Shown here: piece after piece, positions 935 through 37,782 of the stretch
Layout of the letters: every line of letters starts with the position of its first letter
How positions within the stretch are numbered: position 1 is the first letter of the stretch
IMG/VR virus record: IMGVR_UViG_3300044712_002668
Location: 186,001-250,000 of that record
Length of the DNA stretch: 64,000 nucleotides
Strand: one strand, 5' to 3'
Notes under the pieces: model-generated
What the model was told of the DNA's origin: nothing
Database searches by the model: none
The model's input: the letters and a program-made list of their open reading frames with translations, nothing else
Position numbers and translations under genes: made by a program

Positions 935-968
935 TAATTTGATATATAAGCGGAACGCGAGTTTAGAA

Positions 969-1037
969 TCACCATTAGTATAATGGCAGTACGGTACTCA
1001 TATGAGTACCAGTGCAGGTTCGAATCCTGTAGGTGAT
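969..1037 (+). pseudogene. degenerate tRNA-like gene (Met-CAT-like relic)
   Basis: D arm GTAT-AATGGCA-GTAC and T arm GCAGG-TTCGAAT-CCTGT are present; acceptor is one base short; anticodon arm is the palindrome GGTACTCATATGAGTACC with no 7-nt loop. Confidence 0.6.
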
Positions 1038-1076
1038 TTATACAAATTTCGTTCCGCTTATTTATTTAAGGGTTAA

Positions 1077-6988: not shown

Positions 6989-7873
6989 TTATATCACAGT
7001 ATTCATATTTTGTTGAAGGTAACCTATATAATATTCAAATGATTCATTAGGTTTCAATTCTCCATCTTCAATTTTCTTTTGAAGAACGTTTCTCAACTCA
7101 CCGATTTTTGGTCCTAATGGAATATTCAGGCTATCTGAAATAGCATTTCCCAATCCCTTTGGGAGATAGGTTGTTTTTTCATCCTCTTGTCTTATTTTTA
7201 TAATTCTCTTTTTAAGATTATCAATACCTCTTAAAATTTTATTTCTTTTACTATCATTACCTGTAGTAATATCAGCTTTAGATAGCTCAAGGATATCATC
7301 CAGGTAAGGACCCATTTCCTTGTCAAATCTTCTTACAGCATTATCTGACCATGAGTCATCATACCCCTCAGTGTACCCAAGATTGTTTATCAAAAACTTG
7401 ATGTGTTCTTTTGTTCCGGGTGAGAAGATATTGTATTTTTTCGCAAACTTCTCAAAGATTTTGGAGCTGTGGTGTTCGTGGTGATGAAACGTTACTTTAC
7501 CATTTTTCCATTCAAAAGTATACGCTTTTCCAAGATCATGAAAAAGCGCAGCCCACCTTAAAGGTACTACTGGTAATGTTTGGTTTACTACCCTTATGGT
7601 ATGCGGCCAAATATCTTTAAATACATTCTTTTCTGTACTGATTTTTTTAGTCTTCTTTAAATTATCAGCATCTTCTATTTCTGGAATAGTGATTGCAAAA
7701 AATCCACATTCCTTTAAAAGATGAAGGGCGATACCTACGTGTGTACCAAGTAATATTTTGTGAAGAAGTGATAAATCTGTGTCTGGTGATAATTCCTTTA
7801 TGTTTGGAATTATACTATTTACAGTTCCATGATTGGCAACTTCTAAAATTTGTATCAATATGTTACTAGACAT
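6989..7873 (-). CDS. HD-domain protein related to the body/tail of CCA-adding enzyme, lacking the nucleotidyltransferase head
   Basis: DIWPHTIRVV, AALFHDLGK, HHHEHHS, LSKADIT; no GG..RD.LL/DxD head motif at the N-terminus. Confidence 0.8.
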   Translation of the reverse strand: MSSNILIQILEVANHGTVNSIIPNIKELSPDTDLSLLHKILLGTHVGIALHLLKECGFFAITIPEIEDADNLKKTKKISTEKNVFKDIWPHTIRVVNQTLPVVPLRWAALFHDLGKAYTFEWKNGKVTFHHHEHHSSKIFEKFAKKYNIFSPGTKEHIKFLINNLGYTEGYDDSWSDNAVRRFDKEMGPYLDDILELSKADITTGNDSKRNKILRGIDNLKKRIIKIRQEDEKTTYLPKGLGNAISDSLNIPLGPKIGELRNVLQKKIEDGELKPNESFEYYIGYLQQNMNTVI

Positions 7874-16219: not shown

Positions 16220-16369
16220 AAGCAACGAAAATGGTGAGACCCTACATGCCTTTCGGCTCCGTCGTGTCTGCCAATTTCACCATACCTCTCTTGCGAGAGA
16301 TAGCGGGACTCGAACCCGCACATCTTTTGGATAACAGTTTTGCAGATGAAAGATCTCAGTCGCGTTGTT
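16220..16369 (-). ncRNA. scaffold RNA copy 1 carrying a circularly permuted class-II tRNA(GCA)
   Basis: P1-GCG-P2-UUUCA|UC scaffold; cargo 16259-16346 is 3' half, GCAA loop, then 5' half. Confidence 0.8.
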
Positions 16370-16774: not shown

Positions 16775-18055
16775 CTATTCGTCATCCCAGATGCTATCCG
16801 TCTTGTCCTCTGCCATCGCCCCCATCGACTCCAATTTTACCTCTATCTCAAAAAATGTTGATAACCACTTCTTAAAACTAAGAAATGTTGATGTAACATT
16901 TTCTGTTTTATGTGGTCCTAGTAAAAATTCAGTTATTTCTGGTGTTCCAAAAACTTTCCATAATCCATTATCTGATAAAAATTTCTTTGGAACAACATAA
17001 TCTGAATATGTAAAATTACAAGATAATTTATCTATATGAGTAAACCCTAAAGAAAAATCAGGATCTATTTTACTATTATCTTTAATTATGTTAGAAGCTC
17101 TAAGGGCGTAAAACATAAGCTGTAGATCAAAGTAACCAGTTCTAAGTTTACCCTGCCAAGTACCAGTTACATTATGATCGTCAGAATAAATATGATCTAG
17201 TTTATCTGACTCTGTAGGAAAAGGCCCAGGTCCATGTCTTGTGGGATAAACCCTCAACAAGCCTAATTTCTTAATAGGATCATCATAGTTAGCTTCTTCT
17301 AACAAGGAATAAACGTTATTGAATGTGGTATCAGTCCAAGTATTATATGGAGTGAAACCTACATTCTCATCAAGAAGAACTCCTTGAGCACCTTCAAATA
17401 GAATATTTTCTTGCTGATGTTCAAATACATGTCTTAGATATGCCGAATCAGTTATGTGTAATCCTGACTCAATAAACTGCTGACATCTTTCAATAAAATA
17501 ATCTATCTCTTCTTCAGTACAGCAAATGTCAAAATTGTTTTTTACAATTTCATTTTGAATTCTTACTTTATTGAGTAGAATATTTTTAGTTTGTAAATCT
17601 TTTACTCTTAAAGAGAGATCTGGATAATCTATATTATACTTTACAGTTTCACCGATACCCATACCACAAGAACCATGGCGTTGATTACCACGATCTTGTT
17701 CTCTTTTTTTATTCAGTAGAATATGTACTGGAGTTGTTACTAAAGCTTCCCTATCTACAGATAAACGAAATAGAGGATTGTAAGGTAGGTCTGTTGCTTC
17801 ATTGAGAAGCGCCCCAGGATTTACAATCATATATTTTGACAAGTGTGTAAATACACTAGGCAAAAATGAACCAGCACCAAATTGTGCAAAGGTATGGTGT
17901 TGATCTTTAGTAACTACATTATGAGCGGCTTGTGCGCCGCCATTATATCTTATAACATGTTTTATGTCATATTTTCTGCACAAATAATCTGTAACAGAGC
18001 CTTTGCCCTCATCACCGAAACCAAGCCCGGCAACAGCAATTACTTTTCTGTTCAT
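16775..18055 (-). CDS. purA: adenylosuccinate synthetase
   Basis: GLGFGDEGKG P-loop, RYNGGAQAAH, EGAQG, TRHGPGPFP. Confidence 0.9.
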   Translation of the reverse strand: MNRKVIAVAGLGFGDEGKGSVTDYLCRKYDIKHVIRYNGGAQAAHNVVTKDQHHTFAQFGAGSFLPSVFTHLSKYMIVNPGALLNEATDLPYNPLFRLSVDREALVTTPVHILLNKKREQDRGNQRHGSCGMGIGETVKYNIDYPDLSLRVKDLQTKNILLNKVRIQNEIVKNNFDICCTEEEIDYFIERCQQFIESGLHITDSAYLRHVFEHQQENILFEGAQGVLLDENVGFTPYNTWTDTTFNNVYSLLEEANYDDPIKKLGLLRVYPTRHGPGPFPTESDKLDHIYSDDHNVTGTWQGKLRTGYFDLQLMFYALRASNIIKDNSKIDPDFSLGFTHIDKLSCNFTYSDYVVPKKFLSDNGLWKVFGTPEITEFLLGPHKTENVTSTFLSFKKWLSTFFEIEVKLESMGAMAEDKTDSIWDDE

Positions 18056-20502: not shown

Positions 20503-21321
20503 TTATTCCTTGAATTCTTTTGGCAAGATATCTACAAAACGTTTTAGATCAAAGTTCTTTGGATCTGAAACCTGACCATCACCTATTTCAATGATACGGA
20601 ATTTTCCGTCAGTTCTTCTCGCTATATCAACAGAGAAAAAACCGTTTGCAAAACCAATTTTATGTACACATTCTGTAAGTATCTCTGGTATGGTATACGG
20701 ATTTGTAGCATGTTTGGGAGAGAATTTCTCCGTATTTGAATATGCTATACCTTTTACTACAAAGAATCTTTGTTCAGAGTTTGTAAGATAATCTTCACCA
20801 TGTCTTACACATACCCCACCCTCAATGCATCCTCGATATTTTTTGATTGCTAAAACAACTTCTTGAATATCATCTTTGGATTTTACCAAAGAACCCGGTG
20901 ACATTGAGTTGGATTTTACAAAATCTTTTATAAAGTAACTAGGCCACTTTAAATTGGCCAAAGCTTCTTTGAAGTTTGCGTTTTCATCTAGTATGATGGT
21001 TTCAGCAGTAAGATGTGCAATCTTCGGATACCAGAATGGTAGGTGATGACAGAATCTATATGACTCTGTAGTAGTAAAAAGCTTGGCTCCGTATTTCTTT
21101 ATTTCATATTCAAGAATTTGATACTCATCGATATTGAGCATCCAGCCACGATATAGCACAGTATCGCCAGCTTTGATCGCTGGCTTGATAGAGATCTGTT
21201 GTCCGATAGTTATAACAGAGGCTTCGTAGCCGTTAGACTGTATAGTATCGAACTCTTCTCGCCAAACACAATCTGGCAAAAAGTCTTTTACTGGATCTGC
21301 TGGATAGAGTATTCGTAACAT
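20503..21321 (-). CDS. ATP-grasp domain protein (R2K-like)
   Basis: FIKDFVKS, EQRFFVV, FFSVDIA, IIEIGDGQVSD. Confidence 0.8.
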   Translation of the reverse strand: MLRILYPADPVKDFLPDCVWREEFDTIQSNGYEASVITIGQQISIKPAIKAGDTVLYRGWMLNIDEYQILEYEIKKYGAKLFTTTESYRFCHHLPFWYPKIAHLTAETIILDENANFKEALANLKWPSYFIKDFVKSNSMSPGSLVKSKDDIQEVVLAIKKYRGCIEGGVCVRHGEDYLTNSEQRFFVVKGIAYSNTEKFSPKHATNPYTIPEILTECVHKIGFANGFFSVDIARRTDGKFRIIEIGDGQVSDPKNFDLKRFVDILPKEFKE

Positions 21322-26036: not shown

Positions 26037-26124
26037 TGCCTCTGGAGGGATTCGAACCCTCAAGCTCTTATATTGAGCGGCAGTTTTTGAAACTGCTGTG
26101 TATACCAAATTCCACCACATAGGC
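26037..26124 (-). tRNA. tRNA-Leu(CAA)
   Basis: GCAGT-TTCAAAA-ACTGC, long variable arm. Confidence 0.88.
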
Positions 26125-26130
26125 AAAAAC

Positions 26131-26308
26131 GGGGCTGCTCTACCGTTGAGCTACTCAACCTGTATTCAAACATTTCTTCGAACGGCACCTTCGCAAAGTG
26201 ATATCCCTTTGCACTCCAGGCTTTAGCTTACGCTTAACGTTGAGAGGAAATTGCCTTCCCAGGACTGTCATACATGTTGATACTGGATTCGAACCAGTGA
26301 CCAACCCC
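26131..26308 (-). ncRNA. circularly permuted tRNA-like gene without scaffold
   Basis: 3' half 26275-26308 precedes 5' half 26131-26160; GTTGA/TCAAC and GCCCC/GGGGT pair across the halves. Confidence 0.65.
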
Positions 26309-26312
26309 TCAG

Positions 26313-26386
26313 TACCGCAAAGTGGACTCGAACCACCATCCTTTTTCTTATGAGGAAAACGCTCAAACCAATTGAGCTATTGCGGT
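26313..26386 (-). tRNA. tRNA-Met(CAT)
   Basis: ACCGCAA/TTGCGGT, TTTTC-CTCATAA-GAAAA. Confidence 0.88.
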
Positions 26387-26391
26387 ATATA

Positions 26392-26496
26392 ATAGCGAAA
26401 ATGGTGTGACAAATGGGAACCGTCCCGTATTTAGGCCCGGAGTCGAACCGATGCCCTCCAATTTTGGCGGAGATGAAATGTCACGAACGCGCTACT
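26392..26496 (-). ncRNA. scaffold RNA copy 2 (degenerate T-arm cargo)
   Basis: UAGC-GCG...GACA-UUUCAUC...UGUC...UUUC-GCUA. Confidence 0.75.
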
Positions 26497-26498
26497 AG

Positions 26499-26581
26499 TG
26501 CCATTGACAGGATTCGAACCTGCATGAGAAAACTCGTCACGTTCTTAGCGTGATATGTATACCAAATTCCATCACAATGGC
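26499..26581 (-). tRNA. tRNA-Leu(AAG)
   Basis: TCACG-CTAAGAA-CGTGA, Leu-type D arm and variable arm. Confidence 0.85.
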
Positions 26582-26586
26582 ATGAA

Positions 26587-26760
26587 GATAACGAAAAGAT
26601 TGTCAGACGGGGTTTTTGCACTAGCCTCCCCGATGATTGTAAATTGAGACTTATTTACTACTAGCAAAACTAGCATCTCAATTTTGGTCGGGGCCGGGAA
26701 TCGCACCACGGTTTCTGTATTTTTCTGATATAGATGAACCATCCAACTATGCGCGTTATC
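26587..26760 (-). ncRNA. scaffold RNA copy 3 carrying a permuted tRNA-Pro-like cargo
   Basis: GAUAAC-GCG...GAUGG-UUCAUC; T arm + CCCCGACCA, hairpin linker, then UCGGGG. Confidence 0.75.
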
Positions 26761-26762
26761 TG

Positions 26763-26845
26763 TGCCGTCAACAGGACTCGAACCTGCATGAGAAATCTCG
26801 ATAGTTTTTAAAACTATTGTGTATACCAAATTCCACCATAACGGC
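26763..26845 (-). tRNA. tRNA-Leu(TAA)
   Basis: ATAGT-TTTAAAA-ACTAT. Confidence 0.9.
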
Positions 26846-26852
26846 TAAAATT

Positions 26853-27060
26853 AAAACAACGAAAAGGGCTCAGACGAAGTTTTTCCAGCATCCGGCCACC
26901 GCAAAAAGCATATTTTAGTTTCGGTTATGTTTCCGAACTCATCTCATCTCTGTCATTCCTGAATAGAAATCGGGGATGAGTACCGCGCGGCGTAAGGGAG
27001 TCGAACCCTCATCGTTTGATTCGTAGTTCAAGATGAATCGTCCAAAAATCGCGTTGTTTT
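26853..27060 (-). ncRNA. scaffold RNA copy 4 carrying a permuted tRNA-Arg(ACG)-like cargo
   Basis: AACAAC-GCG...GACGA-UUCAUC; CU-ACG-AA loop, T arm, ACGCCGC, linker, GCGGUG. Confidence 0.75.
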
Positions 27061-27063
27061 TAG

Positions 27064-27139
27064 ATGCGGGTCTTGGATTTGAACCAAGGGAACTAGGCTT
27101 ATGAGACCCAGGAGTTAGGCCGGACTACTCTAACCCGCA
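27064..27139 (-). tRNA. tRNA-Met(CAT), initiator-like
   Basis: TGCGGGT/ACCCGCA, TGGGT-CTCATAA-GCCTA, fMet-like D arm GAGT/ACTC. Confidence 0.82.
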
Positions 27140-27146
27140 ATAATGT

Positions 27147-27268
27147 AAGTAACGTAAAGATCGAGACCCTACATGCCCACATGGGCGATTCCCCAGGTAA
27201 AGAACCTCGAAAGGTTCGGCGGGGAATTAAGTTTCGAGCTTAGATGAAAGATCCCTAACGCGTTACTT
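27147..27268 (-). ncRNA. scaffold RNA copy 5 (structured non-tRNA cargo)
   Basis: AAGUAAC-GCG...GAUC-UUUCAUC...GGUC...UUAC-GUUACUU. Confidence 0.75.
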
Positions 27269-27305
27269 GGTATAACATATAACATTATATTATATGTTAT
27301 TTAGA

Positions 27306-27427
27306 AACAACGAAATTATATTGACAATGGGCCGGTATTTTTAGCACCGTTCTCCTTTGACCCAGACCGGAATTGAACCGGTTCTCGCCCTAATTTTTGA
27401 TGGATGTAATGTCAATAGCGCGTTGTT
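27306..27427 (-). ncRNA. scaffold RNA copy 6 (T arm plus acceptor-strand cargo)
   Basis: AACAAC-GCG...GACA-UUACAUC...ACCGG-UUCAAUU-CCGGU...UGUC...UUUC-GUUGUU. Confidence 0.75.
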
Positions 27428-27429
27428 AG

Positions 27430-27502
27430 TCTCCCAGGAAGGATTTAAACCTCCGGCCTAAACGTTCGTAGCGTTCCGCTCTATTCGCTGAGCTACTGGG
27501 AG
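27430..27502 (-). tRNA. tRNA-Arg(ACG)
   Basis: CTCCCAG/CTGGGAG, GAACG-CTACGAA-CGTTT. Confidence 0.88.
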
Positions 27503-27867
27503 AATTTATATAAATCTCTATCATTGCCTTTTTTACAAAGTACAAACCCTAACTTTGTATGTGACTTTATCGATGCAATATTATCATGTTTTATAATTGC
27601 GTATAAATGATCCAACTTTTCTGTTTTTATCAGCTCATCATACATTATATTTGAATATCCTTTACCTCTATATTCTGGTTTTATTTCAATATGAGAGCAC
27701 TTTTTACCATCGTATTCAAACACACCAACTTCACCTATTTGTTTATCATTACTGTAAACTGAATATAAATGACCTGGCAGATTATATATAGTATTGCCAA
27801 CAAGTTTTAATTGGGTTTTAATTGACGCTTGTTTGTAATAAATGTTTATATAATCATCAAGATACAT
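27493..27867 (-). CDS. GNAT-family acetyltransferase
   Basis: IEIKPEYRGKGYS acetyl-CoA motif, NIASIKSHTKLGF. Confidence 0.85.
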   Translation of the reverse strand: MYLDDYINIYYKQASIKTQLKLVGNTIYNLPGHLYSVYSNDKQIGEVGVFEYDGKKCSHIEIKPEYRGKGYSNIMYDELIKTEKLDHLYAIIKHDNIASIKSHTKLGFVLCKKGNDRDLYKFSQ

Positions 27868-27900
27868 ATTGTAAAGTTACAAAAATATGCATATAACAGG

Positions 27901-27983
27901 CTCCTGAGGAAAGACTCGAACTTCCATAATCCTTACGGATGACACGTTAACAGCGTGCTGCATTACCATTATGCTACCCAGGA
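27901..27983 (-). tRNA. tRNA-Asn(GTT) with long variable arm
   Basis: TCCTGGG/CTCAGGA-G73, GCACG-CTGTTAA-CGTGT, extra arm ATCC-GTAA-GGAT. Confidence 0.8.
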
Positions 27984-27988
27984 ATAAA

Positions 27989-28130
27989 CTTGACGAAAAG
28001 CTTGAAGACCATTTTTTTTCGCGCTTTACTATTAAGCTATATGAGCAAGAGTTTGATTTGCGCTCATATCGGGACTTGCACCCGAAACTTCGTCATTAAC
28101 AGTGATGAACGATCTTCTAATCGCGTCAAG
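27989..28130 (-). ncRNA. scaffold RNA copy 7 carrying a circularly permuted tRNA-Asn(GUU)
   Basis: cargo 28020-28105; joining CG|UCA gives an unbroken cloverleaf. Confidence 0.85.
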
Positions 28131-28132
28131 AG

Positions 28133-28205
28133 CGATCTGGACGGGAGTTGAACCCGCACAATACACTTCGACAGAGTGTTGCACTACCAATTGTGCTACC
28201 AGACC
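28133..28205 (-). tRNA. tRNA-Asp(GTC)
   Basis: ACACT-CTGTCGA-AGTGT, G73. Confidence 0.9.
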
Positions 28206-28210
28206 AAACG

Positions 28211-28285
28211 TGGGTTATCCCGGTAACGATCCGGGGAATTCTTCTACTTAAGAGGTAGTTGCTGTTCCATTCTAGCTTATAACCC
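28211..28285 (-). tRNA. tRNA-Lys(CTT)
   Basis: GGGTTAT/ATAACCC, CTAC-CTCTTAA-GTAG; T loop ATCGTTA. Confidence 0.8.
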
Positions 28286-28289
28286 ATAA

Positions 28290-28369
28290 CTTAACGAAAA
28301 TGTAAAAGACCTTTTTGTTTTTTAATTTTTCATATTAATTTTAGATGAAAGATCCTTCAGCGCGTTAAG
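28290..28369 (-). ncRNA. scaffold RNA copy 8 (minimal AU-rich cargo)
   Basis: CUUAAC-GCG...GAUC-UUUCAUC-(about 30 nt AU-rich)-GGUC...UUUC-GUUAAG. Confidence 0.75.
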
Positions 28370-28371
28370 AG

Positions 28372-28446
28372 TGGGCCCAGCCGGTAACGATCCGGCGAAT
28401 TCTTCTGCTTAAAAGGCAGCTGCTGTTCCATTCTAGCTTTAGGCCC
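28372..28446 (-). tRNA. tRNA-Lys(TTT)
   Basis: GGGCCTA/TGGGCCC, CTGC-CTTTTAA-GCAG; T loop ATCGTTA. Confidence 0.8.
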
Positions 28447-28452
28447 AATATG

Positions 28453-28568
28453 ATATGACGAAAAATTAATGACCTGTTTTTTCAGCGGGACTTGAACCCA
28501 CAAATGTTTCCGTATAGGGGAAATGCTTTAACCAATTTAGCGATGAAAGGTCATTCAGCGCGTCATAT
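28453..28568 (-). ncRNA. scaffold RNA copy 9 carrying an acceptor-less tRNA body (UAU)
   Basis: D arm, UUUCC-CCUAUAC-GGAAA and T arm lie directly between UUUCAUC and GGUC. Confidence 0.75.
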
Positions 28569-28644
28569 TGGTCCCGTCCCCTGGTTTCGCGCCAGGCTCC
28601 CTTGCTCTTCAGGCAAATGCTTTCACTAGATTAGCTTAGACGGG
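28569..28644 (-). tRNA. tRNA-Phe(GAA)
   Basis: TTTGC-CTGAAGA-GCAAG, encoded CCA; T loop CGCGAAA. Confidence 0.82.
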
Positions 28645-28652
28645 ATAATAGT

Positions 28653-28808
28653 AGATAACGAAAAATTGAAAAACCCTTTTTTACGCGCTCTGACCAACTG
28701 AGCTATCTGCCTATTTTGGGTTCAATTAAGAACCTTGTAGGCAGAATTGGATTCGAACCAATGACATCGTCCTTATAATGGATGAAAGATTTTTCTACCG
28801 CGTTATCT
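28653..28808 (-). ncRNA. scaffold RNA copy 10 carrying a circularly permuted tRNA-Ile(UAU)
   Basis: cargo 28684-28782; joining CG|UCC restores CGUCC/GGACG. Confidence 0.82.
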
Positions 28809-28809
28809 G

Positions 28810-28894
28810 TGGGGCTGATAGGATTCGAACCTACTAGGCCAATCGGCCGACAGTTTTACAGACTGTTGCAACTCTCCCGCTTTGCCGCAACCCC
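28810..28894 (-). tRNA. tRNA-Tyr(GTA)
   Basis: ACAGT-CTGTAAA-ACTGT, long variable arm. Confidence 0.9.
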
Positions 28895-28949
28895 ATAAAT
28901 AAATTCAGTTTTCAGTGATCAATGTTTTCTTTCTGCTTTTTTAGCAGAG

Positions 28950-29020
28950 CAGGCCCCTCCCGATTCGAACGGGAATTCACAGACTTGGAAACTATGCGGT
29001 TACCATTACCTCAGAGACCC
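28950..29020 (-). tRNA. tRNA-Trp(CCA)
   Basis: GGGTCTC/GGGGCCT-G73, ATAGT-TTCCAAG-TCTGT. Confidence 0.75.
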
Positions 29021-29159
29021 ATTTATCATATTGTCTTCTTTTCTTATTTGATTGTTTCTTGTATGCCCTCTTCGCTTCTCGTTCTTCTTTCTTTGTTCTA
29101 TAATTTCTTTTTAATGTTTTTTCTTTCAACCACTTTAGATCATTTTCCAACTCATCCAT
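28992..29159 (-). CDS. small basic hypothetical protein (not in the supplied track)
   Basis: 55-aa ORF MDELENDLKW...KRAYKKQSNKKRRQ; stop lies inside tRNA-Trp. Confidence 0.45.
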   Translation of the reverse strand: MDELENDLKWLKEKTLKRNYRTKKEEREAKRAYKKQSNKKRRQYDKWVSEVMVTA

Positions 29160-32432: not shown

Positions 32433-33791
32433 TTATAGTTTTGCAGCAGCCAATTCGGCCAACGGGGAACGTTCGCATTTTGATAAAGTAATATGTCCAA
32501 CCATTTCTTCATCTTTCATCTTCTCTATAGCTAAAGAAAAACCGTTTGTTTTCTTATCAAGATAGTGAGCATCGATTTGTTCTGGGTCACCGGTCAATAC
32601 TATTTTTGTTTTCTCACCACATCTTGTAATCAAAGTTTTAATCTCATGTAATGTAGTATTCTGCATTTCATCGGCTATGATGAATTGACATGGTAAGCTT
32701 CTTCCACGAATGTATGTCAATGGTTCAACTTTGATTTTCTCTTGTTCGAATAGTTGTCCATAATCCATTCCTGTTTTTTTCTTTCCACCCAACATCATAA
32801 TCAATTCAAGGTTGTCATAGATGGGCTGCATCCAGGGATCCATCTTCTCTCCCATATCTCCAGGTAGGAATCCTAAATCCTTTCCCATTGGCATAACCGG
32901 ACGGCTTACAATCATCTTCGTATAACCACCCTCTATAAATGTTTTATAGAACCCAGCACAAATGGCAAGTAAACTTTTACCACCACCAGCCGATCCAGAT
33001 AGGGTTACCATTTTAACATCGTCATCCAATAATAAATCCAATGCAAATTGTTGTTCCCTGTTCTTTGGTTTGATTCCCATCACCCCCTCTTTAGGAACTT
33101 TCAATGGACATATCTTTTTATATTTTCCAATGTACCTTCCTAAAGCTGTCCTTCCCATATCACTTCTCATCGCAATACAGGCATTAGGATATAAATCAAT
33201 ACCAGCAGGAGGAAGGATAGCTCCAGCTTTAAACATCTCATTTATATAAGAATCTTCAACCTCTAAATCTATAATGCCAGATATAAGCTGATCAGGGTCT
33301 ATTGATTGATTTTCATATGAAGCCGATTGTATTCCTAGACTGTCAGCACGAATGCGTAAGTTTACATCCATGGTGACTAGAATAGCTCTCAACTCTTGGC
33401 TCTCCTTTATATCAAGAGCTGATTGTAGGATGGCGTTGTCCATGCTGTTGTTCTCCATGCCAACACCAAGAAAACGTCTCTCACGGGGCACGTAGACCTT
33501 TAAAATACCATCCCCTACCGGTACTCCGTCTGATAAACTTCCTTCGCAACGCAACTCGTCAATCAAACGGCAGGCTTCCCGCGCTCCTCTCCCACGTATG
33601 CTCTGCTCTGATTTCAATTTATCAAGCTCTTCAAGCACATATATGGGGACATATAAATTGTTATCCTCAAATTTAAAAATAGATCTTGGATCGTGAATTA
33701 AAACATTCGTATCAAGAATATAACTTTTTTTTGTCAAAAGGACCTCTTTAGGGAGAATTTTATCTCCCTTCTTAATACCAGTATATGCCAA
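32433..33791 (-). CDS. phoH: PIN-PhoH (PhoH2/YlaK-like) protein
   Basis: PIN ILDTNVLIHD...VLEELD; PhoH GSAGGGKS, PLTYIRGRSL, DEMQN, LTGDPEQID. Confidence 0.9.
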   Translation of the reverse strand: MAYTGIKKGDKILPKEVLLTKKSYILDTNVLIHDPRSIFKFEDNNLYVPIYVLEELDKLKSEQSIRGRGAREACRLIDELRCEGSLSDGVPVGDGILKVYVPRERRFLGVGMENNSMDNAILQSALDIKESQELRAILVTMDVNLRIRADSLGIQSASYENQSIDPDQLISGIIDLEVEDSYINEMFKAGAILPPAGIDLYPNACIAMRSDMGRTALGRYIGKYKKICPLKVPKEGVMGIKPKNREQQFALDLLLDDDVKMVTLSGSAGGGKSLLAICAGFYKTFIEGGYTKMIVSRPVMPMGKDLGFLPGDMGEKMDPWMQPIYDNLELIMMLGGKKKTGMDYGQLFEQEKIKVEPLTYIRGRSLPCQFIIADEMQNTTLHEIKTLITRCGEKTKIVLTGDPEQIDAHYLDKKTNGFSLAIEKMKDEEMVGHITLSKCERSPLAELAAAKL

Positions 33792-36931: not shown

Positions 36932-37477
36932 TCATTCTTCCACGTATGGGATCAAGGCTATGTACTTTGGCTCAACCTCTTCTACCAACCATACACCATT
37001 GTCACTACAATAAAACTTCTTCCCAGCCTTATACATCTTCCCGGCATCTACAGATAATAACATCGGCTTCCCATGTCTTTTTCCAACCTCCCAGGCTACA
37101 CTCTTGTCCTTACTCAAATGTACATGATGCCTGTCCCCCTTGATTATACCCTTCTCAAATATGGATTTTACATTCCTTGTAGCCGTTCCATGATACAATT
37201 CCTCCGGCGGCTCTGTCTCCTTATACCCCAAATCTACATCTATACTATGCCCCTGTACCGCCCTTATCTTCTTTCCATCTTCACTGAAACTAAATCTCTT
37301 TTTGTTGTTGTTCTCTACTATTTCTTTCAATTCATCCAAACTAATACTTTTCCCTACACTCTTCAAACCTTTCAATAAATCAGATACACTTACCCACCCA
37401 CCAGCATCCAATACTATCCCGGCTTTTGATGGTTCATGCCTCAATACCAAACTTAAAAAACGGCTCAAATTTTTCAT
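36932..37477 (-). CDS. kptA: RNA 2'-phosphotransferase (Tpt1/KptA)
   Basis: SRFLSLVLRH, KKRF, IRAVQGHS, LYHGT, RHHVHLS and NGVWL motifs. Confidence 0.95.
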   Translation of the reverse strand: MKNLSRFLSLVLRHEPSKAGIVLDAGGWVSVSDLLKGLKSVGKSISLDELKEIVENNNKKRFSFSEDGKKIRAVQGHSIDVDLGYKETEPPEELYHGTATRNVKSIFEKGIIKGDRHHVHLSKDKSVAWEVGKRHGKPMLLSVDAGKMYKAGKKFYCSDNGVWLVEEVEPKYIALIPYVEE

Positions 37478-37782
37478 CCAAAAATCATCCTGTATATAAT
37501 GTAAAGGATTCCAACTTGCAAAAACCATTGCATTCTTAAAAAAATCCCCCTAATCCATAACCTCCTATAACATCGTAATAATAAATTAATTCTCAATCCC
37601 TCAAGCTCATCCAATGTCAATTCTTGATTGAGCTGTTTATAGTTTATCATTACCGCAAAGATAAATTTATCTATCTTGCCCTTCATCTCTATCCAGGCAA
37701 AATATGGAGAAAATATCACTATCGGATGTGCCCCCAAAACCAATTCTATCTTCTCCTCTAAATACTTCTCTACATCATCCAT
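37474..37782 (-). CDS. hypothetical protein
   Basis: ORF coupled to its neighbours. Confidence 0.45.
   Translation of the reverse strand: MDDVEKYLEEKIELVLGAHPIVIFSPYFAWIEMKGKIDKFIFAVMINYKQLNQELTLDELEGLRINLLLRCYRRLWIRGIFLRMQWFLQVGILYIIYRMIFG

What the first reader, a model, noticed from the sequence alone, without database searches (positions are those of the whole stretch)
26392..28369. Scaffold copies with non-tRNA, decayed or nearly empty cargo (copies 2, 5, 6, 8)
Seen: copy 8 has only about 30 nt of AU-rich cargo. Copy 5 carries nested hairpins (AUUCCCC/GGGGAAU, GAACCU-UUCG-AGGUUC). Copies 2 and 6 keep little more than a T arm. The scaffold core is intact in all four, and copies 1 and 5 share GGC-AUGUAG-GGUCUC, suggesting duplication. 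Inference: selection acts on the scaffold itself, so it may be a mobile or selfish RNA unit, or a protein-binding RNA, rather than only a tRNA maturation aid. Copy 8 is the natural minimal construct.
Basis: partly seen in the sequence, partly recalled or inferred. Interest (0 to 1): 0.6.

Follow-up and report, generated by a model that had tools for sequence, protein, structure and literature searches.

The report
Conserved RNA handle in phage tRNA arrays
A giant phage carries about a dozen small structured RNAs between its tRNA genes; all share one conserved two-helix "handle" but carry different inserts, an architecture closest to bacterial Y RNAs, and no library searched here describes the family.

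Summary
Copies 2, 5, 6 and 8 lie on the minus strand, as do the tRNAs, and each keeps the same handle: a 7-bp P1, an asymmetric internal loop (CG opposite UUU), P2 (..GAUC/GGUC..), then UUCAUC. The insert ranges from 31 to 76 nt.

The handle occurs 13-14 times in this 336-kb phage record and about 12 times in each of three related jumbo-phage records. Across 44 distinct copies, P1 and P2 covary strongly and about 12 unpaired bases are invariant or nearly so.

The inserts are not decay products. Copy 5 has a 94% identical ortholog with a compensatory change. Copies 2 and 6 belong to a T-arm class found in four genomes. Minimal copies like copy 8 recur.

Units usually start 1-2 nt after one tRNA and end about 2-11 nt before the next, but some stand alone.

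The closest known relative is YrlA (Y RNA-like). Full-length matches stay below threshold (45 bits at most, cut-off 69). The YrlA motif is absent and no Ro60 gene was found, so this is not a member.

Best reading: a modular small RNA whose handle is a protein-binding or end-clamping platform. A new ribozyme or processing stalk is not excluded. A mobile element is not supported.

The parts
28344..28369 (-). Copy 8, 5' half of the handle: P1a CUUAACG, CG, J12, P2a, UUCAUC
   Evidence: (74.8 bits, best match to model R1)
28313..28343 (-). Copy 8 cargo: 31 nt, A/U-rich, with no conserved structure
28290..28312 (-). Copy 8, 3' half of the handle: P2b AGGUCUUU, J21 ..UUUU, P1b CGUUAAG
27148..27267 (-). 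Copy 5. Handle halves at 27243-27267 and 27148-27169. The 73-nt cargo holds three hairpins plus AUGUAG and no T arm. U-to-A change in the UUU(U) stretch.
   Evidence: Ortholog at L204:8086-8204 has 94% cargo identity.
27306..27427 (-). Copy 6. Handle halves at 27403-27427 and 27306-27326. The cargo is class B: a T arm inside an enclosing GGGC/GCCC stem plus one hairpin. Core reads UUACAUC.
   Evidence: Relatives in G001, G002 and G004.
26391..26496 (-). Copy 2. Handle halves at 26472-26496 and 26391-26411. The class B-like cargo has a hairpin, a T-arm-like hairpin and a GGGA/UCCC hairpin. P1 has a compensated G-C pair.
   Evidence: (25.1 bits)
26587..26760 (-). Copy 3: handle plus a permuted tRNA-like cargo (T arm, acceptor-like stem with a long insert, degenerate D region)
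   Evidence: Ortholog at L204:7822-8000.
26855..27058 (-). Copy 4: handle plus a permuted tRNA-like cargo with an 84-nt insert in the acceptor loop
27989..28130 (-). Copy 7: handle plus a permuted tRNA-like cargo (anticodon-like hairpin with loop CUGUUAA, T arm, 7-bp acceptor stem closed by a linker, D arm)
28454..28567 (-). Copy 9: handle around a normal-order tRNA-like cargo (UAU loop). ARAGORN and Rfam call it a tRNA.
28654..28807 (-). Copy 10: handle plus a permuted tRNA-like cargo (loop AUUAUAA, T arm, acceptor with a 26-nt linker, D arm)
   Evidence: (YrlA 33.1 bits)
16221..16369 (-). Copy 1: handle plus a permuted tRNA-like cargo with its acceptor closed by GCAA, and the GNRA hairpin + AUGUAG module shared with copy 5
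   Evidence: Orthologs in G001, G002 and G004.
951..1056 (+). Variant copy on the other strand. P1, CG and UUU are kept and UUCAUC is missing. P2 doubles as the acceptor stem of a tRNA-like RNA with a 4-nt 'anticodon' loop.
   Evidence: (23.3 bits, E 0.004)

Best explanation
The 'scaffold copies' are genes for a family of modular small RNAs that jumbo phages encode inside their tRNA arrays.

Each RNA closes its own 5' and 3' ends in a conserved handle: P1 (7 bp, ..AACG/CGUU..), an asymmetric internal loop (CG plus 2-5 nt opposite 3-4 nt plus UUU), P2 (6-8 bp with a near-invariant GAUC/GGUC top that includes a U-G wobble), then single-stranded UUCAUC. From the top of the handle a variable module protrudes. 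It can be a circularly permuted tRNA mimic (T arm, acceptor stem, D arm), a T-arm-only module (copies 2 and 6), other hairpins (copy 5) or almost nothing (copy 8).

Shown: the fold, its conservation, the cargo classes, the placement between tRNAs, and an architecture that matches YrlA element by element.

Inferred:
- The units are cut out of the polycistronic transcript by RNase Z, acting after the upstream CCA-less tRNA, and by RNase P, acting before the downstream tRNA.
- The handle works as in Y RNAs. It is an end-protecting clamp and a sequence-specific docking site for one common protein, of phage or host. The different modules then present tRNA-like or other surfaces to tRNA-handling enzymes.
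- Permuted modules with 7-bp acceptor stems and tRNA-junction-like linkers are probably also cut by RNase P and RNase Z and given CCA, as reported for Mycobacterium smegmatis YrlA.
For: - Fold: P1 and P2 covary in 44 distinct copies. 93.9% of cells pair against 72.3% in shuffles, the covariation score is 0.555 against 0.155, 0 of 500 shuffles reach it, and slid controls collapse to 34-51%. Mutual information finds only P1 and P2 pairs. Unconstrained folding recovers P1 and P2 in 11 of 13 copies.
- Invariant unpaired bases: CG, UUCAUC and UUU.
- Copy number: about 12 per genome in four records. The family is present in five IMG/VR jumbo-phage records.
- Cargo under selection.
- Placement: an ARAGORN-called tRNA ends within 4 nt upstream of 27 of 52 units and starts within 11 nt downstream of 27 of 52. 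The upstream spacers read N73-CUA, CA or CU, never CCA, and the downstream leaders are AU-rich. A CCA-adding head domain is present in 4 of 5 records.
- Stand-alone units lie between an AT-rich region and a terminator-like hairpin with no tRNA nearby, so the unit is a gene, not only a spacer.
- YrlA-like architecture: Rfam YrlA gives full-length matches at 45.2, 42.3, 37.8 and 33.1 bits. In the alignment, P1 maps to stem 1, the 5-nt and 8-nt loop strands match, P2 maps to stem 2, CUUU/AAAG to stem 3, followed by T arm, acceptor, UA and D arm. The cargo alone scores 28.7 bits against 45.2 with the handle.
- Precedent (PMC4201824): Y RNAs come as several RNAs per locus with a shared Ro-binding stem. 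YrlB may also contain a T arm. M. smegmatis YrlA is cut by RNase P and gains CCA in vivo.
Against: - All YrlA scores lie below Rfam's gathering cut-off (69 bits).
- The Ro60-contacting motif GNCGAAN0-1G is replaced by RACGCG.
- No TROVE/Ro60 gene was found in any of five records, two of them rated 100% complete, whereas known YrlA genes lie within 4 kb of Ro60.
- No partner protein was identified. The small conserved ORFs inside the arrays are acidic and match no RNA-binding family.
- Twelve paralogs per genome interleaved with tRNAs has no precedent among Y RNAs.
- Invariant unpaired bases next to a conserved U-G wobble would suit a catalytic core equally well.
Confidence: 0.42

Rival explanations
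1. The handle is a new small self-cleaving ribozyme placed directly 3' of CCA-less tRNAs. It would cut at or near its own 5' edge, and perhaps its 3' edge, to free the tRNA ends, in the way HDV-like theta ribozymes do next to phage tRNAs. The cargo would sit in a tolerated peripheral position.
For: - About 12 invariant unpaired bases sit in an internal loop and at a helix end, beside a conserved U-G wobble.
- P1 starts 1-2 nt after the upstream tRNA, and the spacer is a conserved C-U or C-A.
- Minimal units of 58-80 nt keep the whole core.
- End-healing enzymes that could act on 2',3'-cyclic phosphate ends are present without any known RNA ligase: KptA/Tpt1 and a conserved HD-domain protein resembling the C-terminal part of CCA-adding enzymes.
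- There is precedent for ribozymes beside phage tRNAs (PMC10879173).
Against: - No Rfam ribozyme family matches at E up to 10, even on minimal copies.
- Hatchet topology differs: its P1 is a local hairpin (PMC4604424). HDV-like folds need pseudoknots, for which there is no covariation here.
- Stand-alone units without tRNAs exist.
- Many tRNA-tRNA junctions in the same arrays have no handle.
- Conserved, structured cargo is not explained by this reading.
Confidence: 0.15
2. The handle is a processing stalk. The sequences flanking the cargo pair into a two-turn helix with an internal loop, which a host or phage endonuclease cuts to excise the cargo RNA or to punctuate the tRNA polycistron. Candidates are an RNase III-type enzyme or the PIN-PhoH protein encoded nearby. 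The rRNA stalks and the T7 RNase III sites work this way.
For: - P1 plus loop plus P2 spans about 20 bp-equivalents with an asymmetric internal loop.
- The unit is placed precisely between tRNAs.
- A PIN-PhoH gene lies 3.5 kb away and is 59% identical between G000 and G001.
- That rRNA stalks and T7 sites work this way is my own knowledge.
Against: - RNase III does not need invariant single-stranded bases such as UUCAUC.
- PIN-PhoH is absent from G003, which is rated complete and carries handles.
- The handle aligns with the retained stems of YrlA.
Confidence: 0.15
3. The handle is a device for maturing circularly permuted tRNA genes. Cleavage at the P2/cargo junctions and end-joining would circularise the cargo. 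RNase P and RNase Z would then remove the acceptor linker to give a normal tRNA, as in the red alga Cyanidioschyzon merolae.
For: - Several cargoes are complete permuted cloverleaves with 7-bp acceptor stems.
- Their 24-26-nt linkers are built like real inter-tRNA junctions: N73-C-N, a hairpin, then an AU-rich leader.
- Some have anticodon-like 7-nt loops: CUGUUAA, AUUAUAA, CUCAUAA.
- ARAGORN calls tRNA-Asn, Met, Phe and Ile on some re-circularised, trimmed cargoes.
- KptA/Tpt1, which removes the 2'-phosphate left by one kind of tRNA ligase, is encoded in G000 and G001.
Against: - Rnl1, Rnl2 and RtcB ligases are absent from G000, G001 (complete), G002 and G004.
- The junction is not a bulge-helix-bulge (sequence).
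- The same UCAUC would have to serve as the 5' strand of every anticodon stem.
- Many cargoes cannot give a tRNA: copies 2, 5, 6 and 8, and those whose acceptor is closed by GNRA-like loops.
- The anticodons are redundant with canonical tRNAs in the same genome.
- The ARAGORN calls came from 64 trims per copy, so multiple testing applies.
Confidence: 0.08
4. One reading: a selfish, mobile RNA or DNA unit that spreads within tRNA arrays and picks up tRNA fragments.
For: - There are many copies per genome.
- The order of units differs between G000 and G004.
- Cargo content is heterogeneous and includes tRNA pieces.
Against: - Copies within one genome share only the functional core, and P1 and P2 differ by compensated changes.
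- Cargo classes are orthologous across four genomes.
- No reverse transcriptase was found.
- No match in one representative genome for each of 185,579 bacterial and archaeal species, using a minimal-copy pattern.
- No target duplications or fixed terminal repeats are seen.
Confidence: 0.05

Closest known systems
YrlA / YrlB bacterial and phage Y RNAs (Rfam RF02553; Chen et al. 2014, PMC4201824)
   Same: - The 5' and 3' ends pair into stem, asymmetric bulge (5 nt and 8 nt), stem.
- The module on top is a permuted tRNA mimic in the order T arm, acceptor stem, UA, D arm.
- Several RNAs per locus share one handle and differ in their modules, and YrlB may also carry a T arm.
[quoted passage not shown]
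- Full-length sub-threshold matches to the Rfam model.
   Different: - Scores of 33-45 bits lie below the 69-bit cut-off.
- The handle reads RACGCG...UUCAUC...GGUC...UUUCGU instead of GNCGAAN0-1G.
- No Ro60/TROVE gene in five phage records.
- About 12 copies per genome, interleaved with tRNAs.
- Many copies have no tRNA-like module at all (copies 5 and 8).
HDV-like theta ribozymes next to phage tRNAs (PMC10879173)
   Same: A small structured RNA encoded directly beside phage tRNA genes, with a possible role in tRNA end formation.
   Different: There is no HDV-like double pseudoknot and no Rfam match. The ends of this element pair with each other and enclose a variable cargo.
Circularly permuted tRNA genes of Cyanidioschyzon merolae, and split tRNAs of Nanoarchaeum (my own knowledge; reviewed in PMC3400036 and PMC4238349, which were listed but not read)
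   Same: The 3' half of a tRNA lies upstream of the 5' half, with a linker between the acceptor strands. The flanking sequences pair with each other.
   Different: There is no bulge-helix-bulge motif. No splicing endonuclease or ligase was found. The break lies at the D-stem/anticodon-stem junction, and many cargoes cannot form a tRNA.
Phage T4 RNAC and RNAD (PMC9697503; their location in the tRNA cluster is my own knowledge)
   Same: Small stable non-tRNA RNAs of unknown function, encoded with phage tRNAs.
   Different: No sequence resemblance to the part of RNAC printed in that paper. There is one copy of each in T4, and no shared handle is known.

Membership tests
YrlA (Rfam RF02553) | Score at or above the curated gathering cut-off (69 bits) | tested here: not met
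   The best score is 45.2 bits (L011:10921-11033). Copy 10 scores 33.1 bits. Copies 2, 5, 6 and 8 give no match at E up to 10.
YrlA (Rfam RF02553) | GNCGAAN0-1G motif near the 5' end (the putative Ro60 contact) | tested here: not met
   The 5' strand reads RACGCG in 43 of 44 distinct copies. CGAA appears only on the opposite DNA strand, which U-G wobbles and the T and D loops rule out as the RNA strand.
YrlA (Rfam RF02553) | tRNA-like domain in the order T arm, acceptor stem-loop, D arm, on a stem-bulge-stem | tested here: met
   Met by copies 1, 3, 4, 7 and 10 and by many relatives. Not met by the four copies of this finding: copies 2 and 6 have a T arm only, and copies 5 and 8 have none.
YrlA (Rfam RF02553) | Encoded within about 4 kb of a Ro60 (TROVE) gene on the same strand | tested here: not met
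   No TROVE match at E up to 1 in G000-G004, two of them rated 100% complete.
YrlA (Rfam RF02553) | Bound by Ro60/Rsr | not testable with these tools
   This needs an immunoprecipitation or gel-shift assay. The host is unknown.
Canonical tRNA | Cloverleaf in normal order that passes ARAGORN or the Rfam tRNA model | tested here: not met
   Copies 2, 5, 6 and 8 are not called by either program. Only copy 9 is called.
Known self-cleaving ribozymes (hammerhead, HDV-like, twister, twister-sister, pistol, hatchet, hairpin) | Match to the family's covariance model or core topology | tested here: not met
   No Rfam match at E up to 10 over 26100-29050, nor at E up to 0.1 over L100 with its minimal copies. 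Hatchet's P1 is a local hairpin. There is no pseudoknot covariation. The hammerhead core CUGAUGA/GAAA is absent from the RNA strand.
Permuted tRNA genes matured by splicing | Bulge-helix-bulge at the junction of leader and trailer, with a splicing endonuclease and an RNA ligase available | tested here: not met
   The junction has one 5-9-nt single strand on the 3' side only. Rnl1, Rnl2 and RtcB are absent from G000, G001, G002 and G004. The endonuclease family was not searched.
Mobile element (MITE-like or retroelement) | Near-identical copies, fixed terminal repeats, target duplications, or a transposase or reverse transcriptase | tested here: not met
   P1 varies by compensated changes. The flanks are tRNA ends, not duplications. 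No RVT_1 match.

The most novel reading that the evidence does not exclude
The handle is a new catalytic or enzyme-recognised RNA module that excises and end-joins whatever it encloses. Jumbo phages would then make circular RNAs and, from the permuted cargoes, functional tRNAs. These would be the first permuted tRNA genes in bacterial viruses, with KptA/Tpt1 and the HD phosphoesterase cleaning up the RNA ends.
Probability: 0.1. Interest if true: 0.9.

Novelty: new variant of a known kind. Interest (0 to 1): 0.66.

Why it matters
Y RNAs are known as partners of Ro60, present as one to a few genes beside the Ro60 gene. Here an RNA with the same architecture but a different conserved handle is kept at about a dozen copies per genome. 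It is woven between tRNA genes in phages that have no Ro60.

Either Y-RNA-like ribonucleoproteins are broader than the Ro60 paradigm, or this is a new functional RNA core: a ribozyme, or a recognition module for processing. In both cases it bears on how giant phages manage, protect or imitate tRNAs during infection, for instance by acting as decoys or tethers for tRNA-targeting host enzymes.

It also supplies a natural series of constructs, 58-204 nt long, with one constant handle and exchangeable modules. That series is directly usable for biochemistry.

Tried and rejected
- Plus-strand reading as a hammerhead or box C/D RNA (GAUGAA, CGAAA): the order of elements does not fit, and U-G wobbles and the T and D loops fix the RNA on the minus strand.
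- K-turn, triple-helix and pseudoknot ideas: no G-A pairs, and no covariation outside P1 and P2.
- Pairing between the P1b of one unit and the P1a of the next (a 'giant intron' reading): rejected, because P2 pairs only within a unit.
- Retron-like RNA: no reverse transcriptase.
- Phage-encoded Ro60, RtcB, Rnl1, Rnl2: absent, except Rnl1 and Rnl2 in G003.
- Partner hunt by shared proteins. The nine ORFs shared by all four genomes all lie in or beside the tRNA region, but G002 and G004 are about 50%-complete fragments that cover this region. One of the nine resembles a tail/cap protein, one is an HD-domain protein, one is an HNH endonuclease and the rest are unknown.
- Cultured relatives: no DNA match and no match for an 858-aa protein. 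A helicase is only 28% identical to those of Rhodothermus and Thermus phages.
- Bacterial and archaeal species representatives: 27 pattern hits, none confirmed by the model.
The family's true spread is therefore unknown.
- Re-circularising cargoes and running ARAGORN gave mixed, multiply-tested calls, which I do not rely on.
- Thermodynamic z-scores of the four copies are modest, -1.6 to -2.9. The case rests on covariation.
Full report
**Where we are.** The window is bases 186001-250000 of a single 335,988-bp IMG/VR virus record (G000, 38% G+C, rated 78% complete). ARAGORN finds 34 tRNA genes in the window, nearly all on the minus strand. The finding concerns repeats among them. No public phage record matches the DNA, and an 858-aa protein finds nothing. 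A helicase is 28% identical to those of Rhodothermus phage RM378 and Thermus phages. This is therefore an uncultured jumbo phage with an unknown host.

**The observation.** I read the region on the minus strand. Ten units in the window share one frame. Three more lie just left of the window on the other strand, next to tRNAs of that strand. The frame is:
- P1a (NNNAACG), then CG and 2-5 further nt
- P2a (ending GAUC or a covarying variant), then UUCAUC
- the cargo
- P2b (starting GGUC), then 3-4 nt and UUU
- P1b (CGUUNNN)

The 5' motif occurs 8 times against 0.21 expected by chance. The corrections are listed in the observation check.

**The handle is a real, selected RNA structure.**
- Pattern scans of IMG/VR, filtered for both halves, found the same element in four further jumbo-phage records: G001 (169 kb, complete), G002 (208 kb), G003 (459 kb, complete, three minimal copies only) and G004 (219 kb, the closest relative).
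- A covariance model built from seven minimal copies retrieved 83 matches, 44 of them distinct.
- On that alignment 93.9% of cells form pairs, against 72.3% after shuffling. Thirteen of 15 pairs show changes on both sides. The covariation score is 0.555 against 0.155, with 0 of 500 shuffles as high. Sliding the partner by 1-3 columns drops pairing to 34-51%. The alignment was fitted to the model's structure, which favours pairing. However, the slid controls and the independent unconstrained folds, which recover P1 and P2 in 11 of 13 copies, agree with it.
- Among unpaired bases, C8, the CAUC of UUCAUC and two U's before P1b are invariant in all 44. G9, the two U's of UUCAUC and a third U miss in one copy each. 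The closing pairs C-G and G-C of P1 are invariant too. The top of P2 is G-C, A-U, U-G (or C-G), C-G in nearly all.
- Mutual information finds no pairs other than P1 and P2.
- Each of the four larger records holds about 12 copies alongside 31-40 tRNAs.
The core is held.

**The cargo is not debris.**
- Copy 5 has an ortholog in G004 with 94% cargo identity. The one hairpin that differs has lost a base pair on both sides, and P1 carries a U-A to C-G exchange.
- Copies 2, 6 and 11 belong to a class with relatives in G001, G002 and G004, at 0.65-0.80 cargo identity against a background of about 0.5. Their T arm covaries.
- Copy 1's class, with the GNRA hairpin and AUGUAG that copy 5 shares, is present in all four genomes.
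- Minimal units like copy 8 occur in every record, down to 58-59 nt.
- In G000 the classes are: permuted tRNA-like (copies 1, 3, 4, 7, 10), T-arm class (2, 6, 11), hairpins only (5), minimal (8, 12, 13) and normal-order tRNA-like (9). There is also a variant on the plus strand at 951-1056 that lacks UUCAUC.

**Placement.**
- An ARAGORN-called tRNA ends 0-4 nt before P1a in 27 of 52 units, and one starts 2-11 nt after P1b in 27 of 52. Several of the remaining units abut unconventional tRNAs that only Rfam calls, for example around copies 8 and 9.
- The upstream spacer reads N73-CUA, CA, CU or CAA, never CCA. The downstream leader is AU-rich.
- This is the layout expected for RNase Z cleavage after a CCA-less tRNA and RNase P cleavage before the next one (established knowledge of these enzymes). 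A CCA-adding head domain is encoded in 4 of 5 records.
- The unit is more than a spacer. In G002 two units form their own block between an AT-rich region and a terminator-like hairpin, with no tRNA. Many tRNA-tRNA junctions have no handle.

**Closest known thing.**
- The only non-tRNA Rfam family that responds is YrlA, the Y RNA-like tRNA mimic. It gives full-length matches at 45.2, 42.3, 37.8 and 33.1 bits, plus partial ones, all below the 69-bit cut-off.
- The alignment is element by element: P1 with stem 1, the 5-nt and 8-nt strands of the internal loop, P2 with stem 2, CUUU/AAAG with stem 3, CAUC in place of the joiner, then T arm, acceptor stem, UA and D arm.
- The cargo alone scores 28.7 bits and the whole unit 45.2, so the handle adds to the match. 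Part of that difference may be a truncation penalty.
- Here many permuted cargoes have 7-bp acceptor stems closed by 24-26-nt linkers built like true inter-tRNA junctions: N73-C-N, a 5-bp hairpin, then an AU-rich leader.
- Y RNA-like RNAs and Ro60 are already known in some large phages (PMC12135203; PMC7824862).

**Why it is not simply YrlA.**
- The scores are sub-threshold.
- The Ro60-contact motif GNCGAAN0-1G is replaced by RACGCG.
- No TROVE domain is found in any of the five records, two of them rated complete.
- The four copies of this finding lack the full tRNA-like domain.
- I therefore file it as working like a Y RNA, not as a member of the family.

**Other readings.**
- Ribozyme. Invariant loop bases, a conserved wobble and the position right after tRNAs would also fit a new self-cleaving RNA. 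Theta ribozymes set a precedent for ribozymes beside phage tRNAs (PMC10879173). The genome also encodes end-healing enzymes without any known ligase: KptA/Tpt1 at 36932-37528 (E 1e-50), also present in G001, and a conserved HD-domain protein resembling the C-terminal part of CCA-adding enzymes. But no known ribozyme model or topology fits.
- Processing stalk. This reading fits the dimensions but not the invariant single strand.
- Permuted-tRNA maturation by circularisation. This is attractive for copies 7 and 10 and their relatives. But Rnl1, Rnl2 and RtcB are absent from G000, G001, G002 and G004. The junction is not a bulge-helix-bulge. The anticodons duplicate canonical tRNAs. Most cargoes cannot become tRNAs.
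- Mobile element. Nothing supports it.

**Limits.**
- G002 and G004 are about half complete.
- The partner protein and the host are unknown.

**Verdict.** The elements form a family that matches no Rfam 15 family above threshold and no paper found here. They are modular phage RNAs with a Y-RNA-like architecture and a new conserved handle.

Noticed in passing
window 36932-37528 (-): A 198-aa RNA 2'-phosphotransferase (Tpt1/KptA, PF01885, E 1e-50), also present in G001. No Rnl1, Rnl2 or RtcB ligase was found in either record, so its substrate here is unclear.
   Followed up: partly
window 26125-26311 (-): A permuted tRNA-like element without the handle. A 7-bp closing stem encloses a T arm, an acceptor-like stem holding an insert of about 115 nt, and a D arm. 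It sits between tRNA-Met and tRNA-Leu. YrlA scores 22 bits over the tRNA-like part (E 0.011).
   Followed up: partly
window 951-1056 (+): A handle variant on the opposite strand. It lacks UUCAUC and encloses a normal-order tRNA-like RNA whose 'anticodon' hairpin has a 4-nt loop. ARAGORN calls it tRNA-??? at 967-1039.
   Followed up: partly
window 28206-28283, 28372-28446, 28572-28644 (-): tRNA-like genes with unusual T loops. ARAGORN misses all three; Rfam calls the last two at 37-39 bits and does not call 28206-28283. The one at 28572-28644 appears to encode its own CCA, unlike its neighbours.
   Followed up: no
window 27899-27983 (-): An 85-nt tRNA-Asn(GUU) with a long extra arm that starts CAUCC, echoing the handle's CAUC. 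It lies directly downstream of copy 7, whose cargo also has a GUU loop.
   Followed up: no
window 27493-27867 (-): A 124-aa GNAT acetyltransferase ORF embedded in the tRNA/handle array.
   Followed up: no
window 32433-33791 (-): A PIN-PhoH (PhoH2-like) protein: a nuclease domain plus an ATPase domain. It is 59% identical to its G001 homolog and is absent from G003.
   Followed up: partly
window 6989-7873 (-); G000:19993-20376 (+), outside the window: An HD-domain protein resembling the C-terminal part of CCA-adding enzymes is conserved in all four genomes. It is encoded separately from a 247-aa PolyA_pol head-domain protein, which suggests a split CCA-adding or end-repair enzyme.
   Followed up: partly
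window 16775-18055 (-), 20503-21321 (-): An adenylosuccinate synthetase and an R2K-clade ATP-grasp enzyme lie among the tRNA genes.
   Followed up: no
window 27268-27305: A 38-nt AT-rich near-palindrome lies between copies 6 and 5, where other units have a tRNA.
   Followed up: no
G000:1-190000, outside the window: No ORF in the first 190 kb or so of the record has a homolog in G001, although the rest shares 48 ORFs with it. IMG/VR labels the record 'provirus'. Part of the record may not belong to the phage, or may be a highly variable arm.
   Followed up: no
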